NCBI RefSeq assembly: GCF_037042905.1
Contig: NC_087246.1
Coordinates: forward strand, 37,200,001-37,264,000
From: Lytechinus pictus
Lineage: Eukaryota
Reading direction: 5' to 3'
DNA length: 64,000 bases
Part shown: piece by piece, positions 42,074-62,739 of the stretch
Position numbering within the stretch: position 1 is the first letter of the stretch
How the letters are laid out: each line of letters starts with the position of its first letter
Notes under the pieces: model-generated
The model's input: only the letters and a program-made list of their open reading frames with translations
Database searches by the model: none
What the model was told of the DNA's origin: nothing
Position numbers and translations under genes: made by a program

Positions 42074-49190
<7,117 letters not shown>

Positions 49191-49926
49191 CTATGCAATA
49201 TTTAGTTTTGGTGATGCTTTCATCCGTAGAAGTCTCAGACCTGCAGACCTGGATATATCCACGATTAATCAGGATCTGAAAACAATAATTCAAAGCAATG
49301 TTAGATATATACAGTATAAATAAATATTAAACAATCATATCAGATCTTAGTTATATAAATGTAGATCTGATGATTATACCATAATTATAACATAATCCTA
49401 ACATACAATCAAATATTTACAATGCCCTTCAAAATGTTTGGGAACACCAATCACATTCATATAAGTTTGCAAACTTTTTTATTTTTCCCTAGAATTGTTT
49501 TTTCTTGTTAAGTAAACTTGTTGTACCACTATTTTGTGGAAATGTGGGCACCAGAAGGTACGAGTGGCAGCCCTGTTGTGTTGAGTGCATGGCATCAGAA
49601 AGTTGATAGTTGAGCATGACGGAAGGATGAGTTTGGGTGCGTGTGTCCTGCCATGAGATTTCATGCTGTTGGGCTGAGTGAGTCTTTGCTTTCAGAGAGG
49701 ATTATTTTTAAAAATAGGCCTATATGATTTTAATTGTTTTTTAGATTACGCAACAGACTCTTTATACTGCTGACTCTTCATTTGAAAAAAGAATCAAAAT
49801 TTTTAATATAATTAGAAAAAAGTTTTTCCTTTGAAATTTTGACGACACCGTAATTGATTGCAAATGCGATGGTCCGATAAATCAGCCAAATTAAAGCTAA
49901 AGAGTGCAGTGGTGAGTGGATCCCCG

Positions 49927-50121
49927 TCGATTTCATTTTTAAAGAATCCATTAAAAAAACGAGAAAAATGTTATGAAAAGATGGGAAGAGCTTACGGCCC
50001 TGTTTACTTCGCCATCTTGATTTCTTTGTCTTCCGCTTGGCGACAGCAGGCAAACCGCGCGATTTTTTTCATAACATTTTTCTCGTTTTTTTAATGAATT
50101 CTTCTTTAAAAATGAAATCGA
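49927..50121. repeat. ~53-bp inverted repeat with 86-bp spacer
   Basis: 49927-49979 is the reverse complement of 50066-50121, apart from a 3-nt indel and one substitution. Confidence 0.92.
49996..50060 (-). promoter_or_regulatory. Putative non-coding first exon and core promoter of SLC66A2
   Basis: CpG-containing patch with YY1-type CAAGATGGCG (minus strand, 50019-50010), followed by donor GTAAGC at 49995. Candidate acceptor TTTTCAG precedes 49275 and opens the ATG-containing exon. Confidence 0.6.
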
Positions 50122-50165
50122 TATCGCAGAAATGTCGTGAATGAAGTTGAACCCCATGTACATGA

Positions 50166-50320
50166 TTTAAGGCTAGATCTTTTAGAGGGAAAGTATAAAT
50201 CTCGGGGGCGAAAGTTTCTGGTTTTGTGGCCGTACTTGCATGACTATGCCTTAGCGTCCCAGGCTTCATGGGGAGTAAGCCTACGTAGAGTAGATGAATT
50301 TTACTCCCCAGAAGCCTCCA
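50166..50320. repeat. Direct repeat copy 1 containing a long hairpin (candidate structured RNA)
   Basis: About 91% identical to 51991-52146 (13 substitutions and 1 indel by hand alignment); hairpin at 50261-50317. Confidence 0.9.
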
Positions 50321-50810
50321 AGCCAGGCTAGCCCAGGGCAGGAGGGCCCTGCATAGTATACATCCACTGGTTCACCCCGACCATTCGCCATACAGAAAAA
50401 TGTACGGGGTGGGACTGATCTGAGACCAGTGCCGCTAACACTGTCATTTCTATGTAGGAACGCGCGAAGTAAAAGAGTCTGACTTACCAATTCTTGTGTT
50501 GACCCAAATGCAGATTTTGGTTCTACTTAAACAGGATTCCAATGCCCAATGTGTCAAATATCGTTCTTCAATTGAAGATTTCTTTCTAAATCGGGTAAAA
50601 TCATAAGGAAATTTTTCCTTATTCTCGTCTGGTCCATAGTCTCCTACGTAAGTATTTCAGCACGCCCTCTTGTGCTGAATAAAAGAAAGCTAGCCACTGA
50701 ACAGTGGCAACCACAGAGCTGGTTACAATAAGCTCCTACCTGTTTCCGGTGAAGCATAATAATAGGGAGCTCCGCGATCCGGGGACTGTAGTCTTTTTCT
50801 CACCTGACAC

Positions 50811-51037
50811 CACTAACGTACCTAAGGGGCAGGGAGGGCACACTGCACCCCCTGACGAGTCACAACTCATGCAAGGGACGTACCCCTGCCCTCCTGACAA
50901 GTCACAACTGATCCCTGTGACGAGCCACAAGTGGCCCCCTCTTTTGAACTTGAAGACCTTTTTTTTTTTTTTTTTTTTTCAAATTTTTTGGCGGACGAAT
51001 TTGCCCCCCCCCTTAAAAAATCCTGGGTACGCCACTG
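50811..51037. mobile_element. hAT-like MITE
   Basis: CACTAACGTACC...GGTACGCCACTG with perfect 8-bp TSD CCTGACAC; same family as 62439-62739. Confidence 0.88.
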
Positions 51038-51990
51038 CCTGACACTCAATATTTTGTTCACTATTTTTTTTTTACACAAGAATTATTGTTGTCACAGGCG
51101 GCGGAGGGGGGGGGGTACACATTCAATACCCCTTAAATTTCAGGAGGAGGGGAGAGTTCCCCTTAAGAAATAAAGAAAAAAAAAAAGAACAAAGACTGAG
51201 AAAAAAGTAAGAAATAAAAAATCAAAAGAATTAATTTACGCTCAAAAGAAAAAAGAAAGAAAGGGTAAGGGAAGAGGAAAACAGACAAATGATGCTCTGG
51301 ATACAGTACTAGAAATATTATAGATAAGCCCCCCAAAATAGCCATTTGGAGTTTTTGGACTTTTTTATTCTTTAAACATGTTTATCTAGACGAAACAAAA
51401 TTGCCAATCTGTCGAGGCTATCGAGACATGTTTACCAGAATGCATCACGAGTAGTGTTTCATCCATCCGGGTGGATGAACCTCTATGGCTTCGTGATATT
51501 TTTTTTCTTTTTCGATTTGTCACGATCAAACACCATTGAACGAACCAAGAGTAGTGACGGTCACCGGAGGTGGAAAAATCTGTGAGTTTTTAGTCATTTT
51601 TCATATTATTTTCAGCAATTAGATCATATTTGTTATATAAATTTATGTCAAGTATCACACTTGATCAAGTTCGATAAGGTCATGATGTTTGGGTGAGGGA
51701 AGAGGAGGAAAATAGTCGATGCTTTTTTTGGCCATGCTAGTGTATACACACGAGAACGAGGTTATATTATAACCTCGTTCGTAGGATGAGTGTATACATC
51801 CAGATCCAGAAAAAATATCATGATCATGGAGTCTTCAAGGCTAAGTTTGTCAAAGTTATTAAAAATCTCACATACCGGCAGACTAACTTACTAGGATGGG
51901 GGGTCGGGTGTCCGGACACCATATTTTTGAAGCCTTCTTTTTTGTCTTTCTTTGGATTACACTAAAGTAAAGACAAAGTTGAACCCCAGT

Positions 51991-52146
51991 TTTAGGGCTA
52001 GATCTTTTAGAGGGAAAGTAGAAATCTCGGGGGCGAAAGTTTCAGGTTTTGTGGCCGTAAGTGCGTGAATATACCTTGGCGTCCCAGGCGTCAGTGGGGA
52101 GTAAGCCTACGTAGAGTAGGTGACTTTTACTCCCCAGACGCCTCCA
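51991..52146. repeat. Direct repeat copy 2 containing a long hairpin (candidate structured RNA)
   Basis: Paralogue of 50166-50320; hairpin at 52086-52143. Confidence 0.9.
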
Positions 52147-54169
52147 TAAGTTGAGGCGTTGCCCTTCTCAACTCCGCCGACTGCGGCGGGGGAGCTCCTC
52201 ATCTTTTGACCGTCGACCCACTCAAAAAATGACTCACCAATTGAGCTGCCAATATTTCCCGCTTGCATTCCTTTTAGGCTTTAGTTTCTGTTCTCCAGAA
52301 CTTCCAGAAGTATTAATTTAATTGGTGTGGATCCTTGTTATGTATGTGGCATCAGTCGATATTCTTTGAAATACATTCGATCCGACGTGATATCTTGCTA
52401 CTTTTTGCCACGCAATTGATGCACACGTATCATTTTATTTCGATTCATTCCGAGATTTTGTAAACAAAGATAATGCCACGCCTAATGAGTTTGAAACGAT
52501 GAGGGCGACAAATGGTTGGTTGCAGAGTTGGTTGGTTTTTTTCTTTCTCTTAGACTAGTAATCTTTTTTATTTATAATGACAACCCGCATAACCATTTAA
52601 AAATAATTATTGAATTTTTTATTTCACTTGGTGAGTTGGGAAAATAAGATTAAAGAACATCAACAACAAAATTTCAGCCATCAAACTTCTCATATGGGGA
52701 AGTATTATTAACAAAAAAATTGGGCAAAAATAATGAATAAAAATGTAAAATGTCATTATAGGCCCACCAAGCCGCCCGACTTTGTGGTCAGATTATTTTC
52801 CCCTTTTAGGCCTAACGTATAGGCTACTAGAATTTGATTTTTTTTAGCTAATACCTTGTATCTTCGGGCGTAGGACTAGTCATAAGCCCCGTGGGGTGAT
52901 TAGGCTCTTTTATACAGCATATAATCTCTAAATTATATACATGTAACACCTTCAAAATGTGTTTGTCGGGGATGCCGAGGGGTAGGGGGTAGCCTACGCA
53001 CCTCCGACCCCAATCTCCTGAATGAGTTAAACACCTGCGTTGATCAGAATGACTGAGGAGAACCACAACCCCTAGCAGGTGCGGATAAAAAATAAAAATA
53101 ATCACTCTTTAATGAAGCTATTTTGAGTTCTTTCATTTTCTGTCTCTCTCTCTCTCTCTCTCTCTCGTTTTTGTTGCAATTTTACGGGCTGCACCTTTAA
53201 CCGACGCCCGCACCTACCCATCCCCCCCCCCCCCGGCTCTGGCCATGCCTAAACACCACGGAGCTGTTGTAATAACTGATTTAGACCTTTTTGGGGGGGA
53301 CTATACATGAATAGGCCTACACGGGATCTAGAAATGAACGGACTTTGGACCGTTTTGACGCAGAAAGTTCGAAGTCCAAGTGTACAGTTAAACATTTTGG
53401 AATAATCTTGATGTCCAGTTAAGTCTGAAGTCCACACAATAGAGACTCTCATTGTAAATAATCGACAAGAGTTATAAGCGATATTACTTGTACATGATGA
53501 TTTAATAGAAACATTAATTTCAATGAGGCACGTTAATGTATGATATTTCATTTGCATTTTCGTCATGATCATCGGGATAGCCCACAAACAATTAAATGTC
53601 ATCCGACAGACGGGACCTGGAAACGCTTTTTTGAACAAGGGGTGCTTGTTTGACACACTATTACAAGCAAAAACCGAGACAAAACAAACAAACAAAAAAA
53701 TTATCGCTCCAAAATGAAAGTGCTTTTAATTAAACTTCTTTATCAAATTCTAGCATACCAAACCTAATTTCCAGCTGGGATGCTGCCTATGGTGTACAAC
53801 AATATTTTACAGCACCCTAGAAAAATTGGGAGAGGGGGCTTCACCCACAGCACCTCCGCTTCCCAGGGCCATGTCATCTGATAAATTGAAGTGAAAGAAT
53901 GCCAGGTTCAGTTGACCAGCACATGTGCGTTATGGGTATCAGATATAGGCCTATCTTTCATTATGAGTTGCAATTATTTCCTTGTCGTATTTACTAATTG
54001 GCGGTCAGTTATAATGCCTATTTTCTTTGTTCCAATGATCGATCCATAAAGTGCGTTACACGTACCTCAGTCAGGGTCAGGTCTGATGGTCAGGGACAGG
54101 CCTGATGGTCAGGGTTATCCAGCACAAAACGTCATCATACAACGGTAGGGCTCTGTTTGATAATTAACC

Positions 54170-55687
54170 ATGGACGGGGAGATTCAATCGACAGGCCAAA
54201 GAACTCGTAATTGCCTTAGAAACATTGACAGCAATGTCGATCAAGAGGATGGTGACGATAAAAACATCGTCCAGCTTCGACGCAGCCTCAGCGTCTTCGA
54301 CGGTATCATGATCAACGTCGGCATCATGATTGGTACCGGAATCTTCATATCGCCCAAGGGGGTAGTTGCCGGGGTAGAGAGCGTCGGGGCCACCCTCTGT
54401 GTTTGGGTGGCTGCAGGAGTCATCACGCTCCTGGGTGCACTATGCTACGCCGAGTTGGGCACCACCATCCCTGCATCAGGGGGCACTTACACCTACATTC
54501 AAGTTTGCTTTGGAGATTTTGCAGGATTTATCAACTTCTGGGCGAATGCCGTTATTGTTTCGCCATCATCGAACGCTGTCGTTGCCTTGATGTTTTCAAT
54601 CTACTGCCTTGAACCTTTTTACCCGGACCCGGATTGCCCACCTCCGAAGATGGCCATCAAACTCTTTGCAATCTTGAGCATTTCGTTCACTATGTTTCTC
54701 AATTGCTGGAGCGTCAAACTTACGACAGTCTTACAAAACACTCTGGCGATATGTAAACTGATTCCACTGTGTATCTTACTCATTAGTGGTATTGTGAAAA
54801 TTGGCATGGGGAGCACTGAATACTTCGAGGAATCCTTTGCATCGACCGATGTCAGCGGGATAGGCACGGCACTTTATTCCTCTCTGTTCGGCTACGATGG
54901 TTGGCAGTCGATCAACGTCATAACTGAAGAACTTAAGAACCCATCAAGGAATCTTCCACTTTCCTTGATAATCTCTATATCGATAACATCCTTTGTGTAC
55001 ACTCTGACCAACGTTGCTTACTTCACCGCTCTGTCTCCCTCAGGGTTGGTAGCTTCTGACGCTGTAGCCTTCAGCTACGCACATCTCGTCCTTGGAAAGT
55101 TTGCAGTCATAATCCCCATCACGGTCGTCCTGTCAACCCTAGGTTGTCTCAACGGATCAATCCTATCCTCATCCAGGGAGTTCTTCGTTGGAGCTAGAAG
55201 AGGACACCTACCCCGTTTCCTATCAACAATTGGGATTCGCCACAAGACACCCATTCCTAGTGTCATTCTAAACTCCATCATCACCATAACCTGGTGTTTC
55301 GTAGATAATGTCTTCACCATTATCAACTTATTTAGCTTTGTCCAGTGGGTCTTCTTCGGAAGTGCAGTCACCGGTCTGATTTATCTGAGGATCAAAGAAC
55401 CAAATCGTCCTAGACCTTTCAAGGTCAACATCATCTTCCCTATTATATTTGTTGTAGTGTGTATCTGTTTAACAATCCTAGGATTCATCGGGGCACCCGT
55501 GGATTCACTCATCGCAACTGCGATCATCATAAGCGGTATCCCCATATACTTTGTGCTTGAGCATCAACCGAGCCCTAGAGGTAAATGGGCGAAGGGCATG
55601 AAGAGGAATATATTAGTCTTCTTACAGAAACTTTTATTTGTTTCACCAGAAGAACTTAAGAAACATAACAATTTTCATCTAATTTGA
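54170..55687 (+). CDS. Intronless SLC7 L-type/heteromeric amino-acid transporter light chain (b(0,+)AT/y+LAT/LAT-like), 505 aa
   Basis: Single ORF with IGTGIFISPKGV, GALCYAELGTTIPASGG, extracellular Cys (PDCPPP), LFGYDGW...TEELKNPSRNLP, GARRGHLP, TPIPS and PRPFKV; about 12 hydrophobic segments. Confidence 0.95.
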   Translation: MDGEIQSTGQRTRNCLRNIDSNVDQEDGDDKNIVQLRRSLSVFDGIMINVGIMIGTGIFISPKGVVAGVESVGATLCVWVAAGVITLLGALCYAELGTTIPASGGTYTYIQVCFGDFAGFINFWANAVIVSPSSNAVVALMFSIYCLEPFYPDPDCPPPKMAIKLFAILSISFTMFLNCWSVKLTTVLQNTLAICKLIPLCILLISGIVKIGMGSTEYFEESFASTDVSGIGTALYSSLFGYDGWQSINVITEELKNPSRNLPLSLIISISITSFVYTLTNVAYFTALSPSGLVASDAVAFSYAHLVLGKFAVIIPITVVLSTLGCLNGSILSSSREFFVGARRGHLPRFLSTIGIRHKTPIPSVILNSIITITWCFVDNVFTIINLFSFVQWVFFGSAVTGLIYLRIKEPNRPRPFKVNIIFPIIFVVVCICLTILGFIGAPVDSLIATAIIISGIPIYFVLEHQPSPRGKWAKGMKRNILVFLQKLLFVSPEELKKHNNFHLI

Positions 55688-62303: not shown

Positions 62304-62438
62304 CATGAAGATGATACTAAACTTCAATTTAGACTTAAATTAGTCATTGTTTCATCAAACATAGATTGTTAAAAGCAATTACGTATATAAATCCAAAGCC
62401 AAAGTATTGTAATTCCATAATATTGCATGGTATCGTGC

Positions 62439-62739
62439 CAGTGGCGTACCTAGGATTTTCGACAGGGGGGGCAAAACCGTCCGCCAAAAAATTTGACAAG
62501 CAAAAAAAAAAAAAAAAAAAAAAAAAAGGTCTTCGATCACACATAATAACTTTCGTACCAGAAAAAAATGGACAAGCAAAAAAAAAAAAAAAAAAAAAGG
62601 TCTTCAAGCTCGTCAGGGGGGCATTGAAGGTCTTAAAGCTCGTCAGGGGGGGCAAAGATACGTTTTTGCATGGGTTTTGACTCGTCAGGGGGGGCAGAGT
62701 GCCCCCCCTGCCCCCCCCCCCCCCGTAGGTACGCTAGTG
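62439..62739. mobile_element. hAT-like MITE
   Basis: CAGTGGCGTACCTA...TAGGTACGCTAGTG with perfect 8-bp TSD TATCGTGC. Confidence 0.9.

What the first reader, a model, noticed from the sequence alone, without database searches (positions are those of the whole stretch)
50144..52243. Two paralogous structured elements with a compensatory base pair, each bracketed by splice-like sites: candidate unidentified intronic ncRNA pair
Seen: 50166-50320 and 51991-52146 are ~91% identical and share a ~17-bp stem. The pair T50265-A50313 in copy 1 is G52090-C52139 in copy 2, a double change that keeps the pairing. Beyond the hairpin the copies are unalignable, yet both stay GC-rich and self-complementary (copy 1: CACTGGT/ACCAGTG, CACCCCG/CGGGGTG, ACTATGC/GCATAGT; copy 2: AGTTGAG/CTCAACT, CCGCCG/CGGCGG). 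They then reconverge on TGACTYACCAATT (50480, 52230), which on the minus strand is a consensus donor G|GTRAGT (50487, 52237). The other conserved end reads TACTTTCCCTCTAAAAG/ATCTAG on the minus strand, an acceptor-like site. Inference: two short introns (~310 and ~235 nt) of a minus-strand host transcript or extended SLC66A2 leader, each holding a structured RNA with a constant and a variable domain. An ACA-nnn (GGCCACAAAA) follows the structure in both. I could not match them to any RNA family I know.
Basis: partly seen in the sequence, partly recalled or inferred. Interest (0 to 1): 0.75.

Follow-up and report, generated by a model that had tools for sequence, protein, structure and literature searches.

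The report
Transposon arm copies inside one intron
The two "paralogous structured RNAs" are two broken copies of a very common miniature jumping gene, whose ends carry a conserved hairpin, lying inside one real 3-kb intron of a transporter gene; this is ordinary, and nothing shows a new RNA gene.

Summary
The sequence observation holds.

The interpretation does not hold. Both stretches are arms of a dispersed foldback-type miniature DNA transposon ("element A"). It is 525-600 bp long, has ~260-nt inverted arms, termini TAGCCTGGAGGC...GCCTCCAGGCTA and an 8-bp target duplication. The first look found about 1,500 candidate arms, and all 40 scored were real.

The T-A/G-C difference marks subfamilies. 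Of 106 intact hairpins genome-wide, all are T-A or G-C and none is mixed.

The "variable domain" of copy 1 is a second, young 1,428-bp transposon ("element B", 8-bp duplication TATACATC). That of copy 2 is single-copy intron DNA.

Stranded RNA-seq shows one real minus-strand intron, 52237 to 49276. It joins a non-coding leader exon (52238 to about 52414) to the first coding exon of an SLC66A2-like (PQ-loop) gene. The two short introns and their acceptors have no read support, and unique intron DNA has zero coverage.

Earlier notes of this scan judged other hairpin families in this genome to be ordinary MITEs. Interest is low.

The parts
48794..49275 (-). First coding exon (exon 2) of the SLC66A2-like PQ-loop gene
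   Evidence: The ORF at 48792-49103 hits Pfam PQ-loop PF04193 at E 2.5e-10. RNA-seq depth is 9-54 with first mate on +. Piece 48794-49275 of an X1 contig covers it.
49276..52237 (-). Real intron 1 (2,962 nt, GT..AG on the minus strand). It holds both element-A copies and element B.
   Evidence: Joint 49275|52238 with ends CT..AC on the + strand: 4+2+28 reads in X12/X13/X14, and X1 contig record 1 joins 52238-52414 to 48794-49275.
52238..52414 (-). Non-coding leader exon 1 of the SLC66A2-like gene. The start of transcription lies between 52414 and 52485.
   Evidence: Depth is 4-31 in bins 52218-52485 and 0 beyond 52486. The contig piece covers 52238-52414. The stretch is single copy in the genome.
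49927..50330 (.). Element A copy 1, a truncated foldback MITE: the innermost 53 nt of the left arm (49927-49979), the 86-nt centre (49980-50065) and the full right arm (50066-50330). The right arm has a 4-nt insertion before the terminal GGCTA.
   Evidence: Inverted repeats I1/I7. BLAST against full-length elements L004, L005 and L022. Terminus alignment.
50261..50317 (.). Subterminal hairpin of copy 1 (AGGCTTC-A-TGGGGAGTAA ... TTACTCCCCA-GAAGCCT), T-A subfamily
   Evidence: Folds. Pattern match at C2:37250262-37250316.
50357..50364 (.). Left copy of the 8-bp target duplication TATACATC of element B
   Evidence: Read directly. The same 8 bases recur at 51793-51800. Six other B copies also have 8-bp duplications.
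50365..51792 (.). Element B, a young 1,428-bp non-coding DNA transposon (CACTGG...GAGTG).
   Evidence: Copies are 96-99% identical over the full length. At least 15 are near full length and the first look found 2,490 candidates.
50482..50487 (-). GTAAGT inside element B, used as a splice donor in transcripts of one or more B copies
   Evidence: Loose ends at 50487/50488: 8 reads in X13 and 3 X1 contigs, with different partners. No joint lies within the window stretch, and the partner sequence is absent from the window.
51793..51800 (.). Right copy of the 8-bp target duplication of element B
51968..52146 (.). Element A copy 2: only the outer ~178 nt of one arm, G-C subfamily, with the last 5 nt of the terminus (GGCTA) missing
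   Evidence: RNA loose end at 52146 reads GGCTA, the canonical terminus from other copies.
52087..52143 (.). Subterminal hairpin of copy 2 (AGGCGTC-AG-TGGGGAGTAA ... TTACTCCCCA-GACGCCT)
52147..52237 (-).
   Evidence: Single copy. The fold has z -2.3, and 5 of 200 shuffles fold as well, so it is weak.

Best explanation
The two elements are two independent, partly deleted insertions of one non-autonomous cut-and-paste DNA transposon family (element A). A is a foldback-type MITE of 525-600 bp with ~260-nt inverted arms, termini TAG...CTA and an 8-bp target duplication, which points to the hAT superfamily.

Both insertions lie in the single 2,962-nt first intron of an SLC66A2-like gene on the minus strand. 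The shared hairpin is the subterminal palindrome that every arm of this family carries about 10 nt from its tip.

The T-A versus G-C 'compensatory pair' is a difference between two subfamilies of the transposon, inherited from their source copies. It did not evolve at this locus.

Inferred, not shown: the palindrome is kept because the element needs it to move, either as paired inverted binding sites for the transposase or as a DNA hairpin. Alternatively, or in addition, mismatches are erased by template switching or conversion within the palindrome. It is not kept because the host uses an RNA.

The sequence after each copy is unrelated flank. Copy 1 is followed by 26 nt and then a young 1,428-bp transposon B. 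Copy 2 is followed by unique intron DNA up to the real splice donor at 52237.
For: Copy number and spread:
- The first look found 1,499 candidates for the arm alone. All 40 scored are real matches at 86-95%, on many chromosomes.

Full-length architecture:
- Full elements have a left arm, an ~86-nt centre and a right arm.
- The conserved terminus GCCTCCAGGCTA is followed by unrelated flanks in about 100 arms.
- 8-bp target duplications are seen in 8 of about 12 complete elements: L004, L005, L008, L016, L039, L040, L032, L034.
- The 4-5 kb versions contain no ORF of 120 aa or more apart from one 126-aa ORF over the left-arm terminus of L034, which was not scanned, and no Pfam domain in the 10 internal ORFs of 63-98 aa that were scanned.

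Hairpin across the family:
- 106 exact hairpins occur genome-wide. Among the 100 listed, 53 are T-A and 47 G-C. The T..C and G..A combinations are both absent.
- Left and right arms of the same element carry the same allele in 13 of 13 pairs.
- On 53 arms not chosen for stem integrity, 97.4% of cells are paired and 5 pairs show double changes. No shuffle of 500 reaches the observed covariation, and slid registers give only 42-57% pairing.
- The subfamilies also differ in linked linker bases.

RNA evidence:
- There is one real intron, joint 49275|52238.
- Unique intron bins 49404-49939 have zero coverage.
- Reads over the repeats mostly run on into unlike sequence (0.53-0.67 of laid reads).

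Other:
- Rfam gives nothing above E 1.6, and all hits are far below gathering scores.
- Published work shows that template switching can create and maintain compensated hairpins without selection on each change (PMC8794818, PMC5453318; found, abstracts only read).
Against: - The autonomous partner was not found. None of the top 30 hAT dimerisation-domain loci carries A or B termini within 1.5 kb, so the superfamily call rests on duplication length and the TAG start only. The terminal TAGCC fits the hAT YARNG motif in 4 of 5 positions.
- Four of about 12 elements lack a clean 8-bp duplication.
- The RNA libraries are long-RNA libraries, so a small processed RNA from the hairpin cannot be excluded.
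- The reason the hairpin is kept (protein binding, DNA structure or mutational homogenisation) is not resolved by any test here.
Confidence: 0.9

Rival explanations
1. One reading: two short introns (~310 and ~235 nt) of a minus-strand transcript each hold a structured non-coding RNA, snoRNA- or mirtron-like, with a constant hairpin and a variable domain.
For: The region is intronic on the minus strand and the donor at 52237 is real. The hairpins are very stable. An ACA motif follows on the minus strand.
Against: - Neither proposed intron has a joint, while the 2,962-nt intron has 34 reads.
- Unique intron DNA has zero coverage.
- No Rfam match.
- The constant domain has about 1,500 first-look candidates in the genome, all 40 scored real, with transposon termini and target duplications.
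- The variable domain of copy 1 is another transposon.
- The 13-mer reconvergence is within chance.
Confidence: 0.02
2. The copies are transposon-derived, but the hairpins (or the 53-bp inverted repeat 49927-49979 / 50066-50121 of copy 1) are processed from the intron, or from the many transcribed family copies, into small regulatory RNAs (endo-siRNA, piRNA or a MITE-derived miRNA).
For: - Family copies are transcribed on both strands somewhere in the genome: reads over the repeats come with foreign flanks in both mate orientations.
- Full elements would fold into ~260-bp double-stranded RNA.
- The hairpin is kept across subfamilies.
Against: - No small-RNA data were available.
- A 17-bp bulged stem is shorter than the stems of animal microRNA precursors (established knowledge, not tested here).
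- Hairpin conservation is equally expected for a transposition signal.
- Nothing is specific to the two window copies.
Confidence: 0.07
3. The pair arose as a local tandem duplication of one intronic element, later split by the insertion of element B, so the two are true paralogues at this locus.
For: Both copies have the same orientation, 1,825 nt apart, and B (1,428 bp) lies between them.
Against: - Each copy is closer to copies on other chromosomes than to the other. Copy 1's best match is 95% against 91% to copy 2.
- They belong to different subfamilies in the hairpin and in linked linker bases.
- Their truncation points differ, and no flanking sequence is shared.
Confidence: 0.02

Closest known systems
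Long-TIR / foldback-type MITEs of cut-and-paste DNA transposons (hAT-like non-autonomous elements)
   Same: Small size (525-600 bp), no coding capacity, long inverted arms around a short centre, an 8-bp target duplication, termini starting with TAG, about 1,500 first-look candidate arms, several subfamilies, and frequent truncated and solo-arm copies in introns.
   Different: No matching transposase was found here. The fifth terminal base departs from the hAT YARNG consensus. Each arm carries its own 17-bp subterminal palindrome whose inner end repeats the terminal TAGC..AGGCTTC in inverted order. I did not check whether the family is already in a repeat library, because none was available.
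Compensated hairpins produced by template switching (Monttinen and Loytynoja 2022, PMC8794818; Loytynoja and Goldman 2017, PMC5453318)
   Same: Paired double changes occur in a perfect stem without observed intermediates, in DNA that forms a quasi-palindrome.
   Different: Those papers concern RNA genes and human mutation clusters. Here the carrier is a transposon arm, and selection on transposition competence is an equally good cause. No ancestral reconstruction was done.
Intron-hosted small RNAs (H/ACA snoRNAs, mirtrons)
   Same: Intronic location on the transcribed strand, a stable hairpin, and an ACA motif nearby.
   Different: No covariance-model match, no bracketing splice junctions, no locus-specific RNA coverage, and a high genomic copy number with transposon hallmarks.

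Membership tests
MITE / non-autonomous class II transposon | Terminal inverted repeats | tested here: met
   Arms of ~260 nt in inverted order in L004, L005, L022 and others. The conserved terminus is TAGCCTGGAGGC / GCCTCCAGGCTA.
MITE / non-autonomous class II transposon | Target-site duplication of fixed length flanking complete copies | tested here: met
   8-bp duplications in 8 of about 12 complete elements; the rest are unclear or offset by a few bases.
MITE / non-autonomous class II transposon | High copy number, dispersed, no coding capacity | tested here: met
   1,499 first-look candidates with 40 of 40 scored real. 106 exact hairpins lie on at least 18 contigs. No ORF of 120 aa or more apart from one 126-aa ORF over the left-arm terminus of L034 (not scanned), and no Pfam hit in the 10 internal ORFs of 63-98 aa that were scanned.
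MITE / non-autonomous class II transposon | Empty (pre-insertion) sites in other individuals or species | not tested
   No related eukaryote genome is available to the genome tools.
hAT superfamily | 8-bp target duplication | tested here: met
   for element A and for element B.
hAT superfamily | Terminal YARNG motif | tested here: inconclusive
   A starts with TAGCC, which fits 4 of 5 positions. B starts with CACTG, which fits 4 of 5 positions, the third (R) failing. The motif is recalled from established knowledge, not checked against a library.
hAT superfamily | Autonomous partner with a hAT transposase and the same termini | tested here: inconclusive
   62 matches to PF05699 in the genome. 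None of the 30 fetched loci has A or B termini within 1.5 kb. The remaining 32 matches and more distant flanks were not examined.
Rfam RNA families (snoRNA, miRNA and others) | Covariance-model score at or above the family's gathering threshold | tested here: not met
   The best hits are 12.6-18.9 bits against thresholds of 40-100, with E 1.6-9.
Short intron / mirtron | Spliced reads joining the proposed donor and acceptor | tested here: not met
   Only joints 49275|52238, 49276|52238 and 49275|52271 are seen. None is at 50179/50173 or 52004/51998.
Spliceosomal intron (the large one, 49276-52237) | GT..AG ends with spliced reads on the gene's strand | tested here: met
   CT..AC on the + strand; 34 reads, all with first mate on +, plus one contig.

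The most novel reading that the evidence does not exclude
The 17-bp subterminal palindrome is a required structural signal for moving this hAT-like MITE family: a DNA hairpin or cruciform, or a pair of inverted transposase-binding half-sites. It would then be kept by selection on transposition. This would explain why three diverged lineages carry different but always compensated stems, and why all four stem halves of an element (two per arm) share the same allele.
Probability: 0.3. Interest if true: 0.4.

Novelty: new member of a known kind. Interest (0 to 1): 0.15.

Why it matters
The result removes a false candidate for a new RNA class. It also shows how a transposon family can mimic the classic signature of a structured RNA: a conserved stem, a compensatory pair and splice-like borders.

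It gives a corrected 5' structure for the SLC66A2-like gene: a non-coding leader exon at 52238 to about 52414 and a 2,962-nt first intron.

For transposon biology it offers a tidy case of a subterminal palindrome kept intact across subfamilies (106 concordant hairpins, none discordant). That case could be used to test selection against template switching as the source of compensated changes.

Tried and rejected
- **Rfam scan.** An E-value scan of 49800-52600 on both strands found only chance-level hits.
- **Autonomous element.**
  - Five far-apart arm pairs were fetched.
  - L032 (5.2 kb) and L034 (4.2 kb) are single elements with perfect 8-bp duplications, but they hold only nested repeats and no transposase. 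L034's one 126-aa ORF lies over its left-arm terminus and was not scanned.
  - L033 is a large palindromic duplication, flanks included.
  - L035 and L036 were cut at 10 kb, so each lost its outer arm. They were not scanned for ORFs and give no test.
  - The top 30 hAT-domain loci lack A and B termini.
- **Homology of the two downstream 'variable domains'.** Rejected. The only similarity is the 13-mer, which is within chance.
- **B's donor at 50487 feeding SLC66A2.** Rejected. There is no joint to 49275, and the partner sequence of the loose ends is not in the window.
- **Tree of arms without stem columns.** It suggests several T-A/G-C switches, but it is noisy and recombination between subfamilies cannot be excluded. 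I therefore claim at least three lineages with compensated stems, not a number of events.
  - The runs tool was busy at first.
Full report
**What is there**

50166-50273 matches 51991-52098 at 89%, and 50269-50320 matches 52095-52146 at 94%. A genome search puts the pair at 91% over 155 nt.

Each stretch folds into a hairpin of 7 + 10-11 bp with a small bulge. The energy is about -34 kcal/mol, z is about -3.9, and none of 200 shuffles folds as well.

The compensated pair is real. Copy 1 has T50265-A50313 and copy 2 has G-C at the same stem position.

**It is a transposon arm**

A search of the window's own genome with 50144-50500 returned dozens of strong matches on many chromosomes, in two separate blocks.
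- The first 180 nt of the query form one family, element A.
- The last ~140 nt form another, element B, with 99-100% identical copies.

With the arm alone, the first look found 1,499 candidates, and all 40 that were scored are real matches at 86-95%.

Many matches come as inverted pairs a few hundred bases apart. Reading one such pair (L004) and comparing all loci shows the full element:
- a left arm of ~260 nt,
- a centre of ~86 nt,
- a right arm that is the inverted copy of the left,
- 525-600 bp in all.

About 100 aligned arms end in the same GCCTCCAGGCTA and are followed by unrelated sequence. Eight of about twelve complete elements have an 8-bp target duplication directly outside TAG...CTA. 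No coding capacity was found, even in two 4-5 kb versions that carry perfect duplications; the one ORF of 120 aa or more, 126 aa over the left-arm terminus of L034, was not scanned.

This is a foldback-type MITE. The 8-bp duplication and the TAG start point to the hAT superfamily, but I could not find the transposase.

**The two window copies**

- Copy 1 (49927-50330) keeps the innermost 53 nt of the left arm, the centre and the whole right arm.
- Copy 2 (51968-52146) is only the outer 178 nt of one arm and lacks the last five bases.
- They are not each other's nearest relatives. They belong to different subfamilies that differ in the hairpin and in linked linker bases.
- So they are independent insertions, not a local pair of paralogues.

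**The compensatory pair, seen family-wide**

A pattern search that left both positions free found 106 otherwise exact hairpins in the genome. Of the 100 listed, 53 are T-A and 47 are G-C. Separate searches for the two mixed forms found none. Left and right arms of one element always agree (13 of 13 pairs).

I then took 53 arms that were not chosen for stem integrity (alignment A1) and counted pairs on them:
- 97.4% of cells are paired.
- Five pairs show changes on both sides.
- No shuffle of 500 reaches the observed covariation.
- Slid registers pair in only 42-57% of cells.

A third, older lineage has GGCTCC/GGAGCC and GGAGAG/CTCTCT instead.

So the stem really is kept, but as a feature of the transposon and at the level of its source copies. 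What keeps it is inferred, not shown. The candidates are paired inverted transposase sites, a DNA hairpin needed for movement, or homogenisation by template switching. Template switching is known to create compensated stems (PMC8794818, PMC5453318, abstracts only read). A tree without the stem columns hints at repeated switches, but it is too noisy to count events.

**The 'variable domains' and the splice-like sites**

*After copy 1.* There are 26 nt of flank and then element B (50365-51792). B is a 1,428-bp non-coding transposon with the 8-bp duplication TATACATC on both sides. It has at least 15 near-full copies at 93-99%, and 8-bp duplications are seen in six other copies.

*After copy 2.* The DNA is single copy.

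*The shared 13-mer.* TGACTYACCAATT is the only similarity between the two downstream regions, and 41 of 200 shuffles score as well.

*The acceptor-like and ACA motifs.* These are part of the arm itself.

**RNA evidence**

Three stranded, rRNA-depleted RNA-seq runs of the same species label, plus one set of transcript contigs, were laid on 48600-52600.
- They show one strong joint, 49275|52238, with GT..AG on the minus strand (34 reads and one contig). It links a leader exon (52238 to about 52414; no coverage beyond 52486) to the exon that starts the PQ-loop protein (PF04193).
- No joint uses the proposed acceptors.
- Unique intron bins (49404-49939) have zero depth in all three runs.
- Reads over the repeats are few, lie on both strands and mostly run on into unlike sequence. 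For example, they continue with the canonical GGCTA at 52146. They therefore come from other copies.
- Loose ends at 50487/50488 show that B's GTAAGT is used as a donor in some B copy. The partner sequence is not in this window.

**Verdict**

No Rfam family matches.

Earlier notes of this scan on the same genome, reportedly the sea urchin Lytechinus pictus (unchecked by me), reached the same kind of verdict for other hairpin families.

What remains mildly interesting is the strictly compensated subterminal palindrome of the family, and the corrected 5' end of the gene.

Noticed in passing
window 50365-51792 (element B); donor at 50482-50487, minus strand: A young 1,428-bp non-coding transposon (8-bp duplication, ends CACTGG...GAGTG) carries an internal GTAAGT that RNA reads and contigs use as a splice donor. 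The downstream partners differ, so B copies seem to give chimeric spliced transcripts. B's first ~70 nt also repeat its terminal CACTGGT in inverted order (ACCAGTG at about +60) around a CACCCCG/CGGGGTG stem (a 72-nt fold gives z -2.95), as element A's end does.
   Followed up: partly
window 54170-55687 (+): An intronless 505-aa amino-acid permease ORF (Pfam AA_permease_2, E 3e-61) lies head-to-head with the SLC66A2-like gene, about 1.7 kb from its leader exon. It may be a retrocopy or a single-exon paralogue of an SLC7-type transporter.
   Followed up: no
window 50811-51037 within B; also 62344-62680: Older relatives of B lack B positions 448-674, which is a T-run plus the motif GGCGGACGAATTTGCCCCCCC...CCTGGGTACGCCACTG. 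A similar motif recurs near 62400-62650. This suggests a small nested repeat (SINE-like) that is shared between places.
   Followed up: no
L033 (G000:C17:5685900-5692450): Two element-A copies 5.7 kb apart have flanks that are reverse complements of each other. The whole locus is therefore a large inverted duplication or an assembly palindrome, not one long element.
   Followed up: no
window 49275|52271 and 49276|52238: There are minor alternative joints beside the main one: 10 reads in one run use 52271 with non-canonical ends, and 3 reads carry six extra letters (AATTGG) at the joint. These may be allelic indels near 52272, or alignment ambiguity.
   Followed up: no
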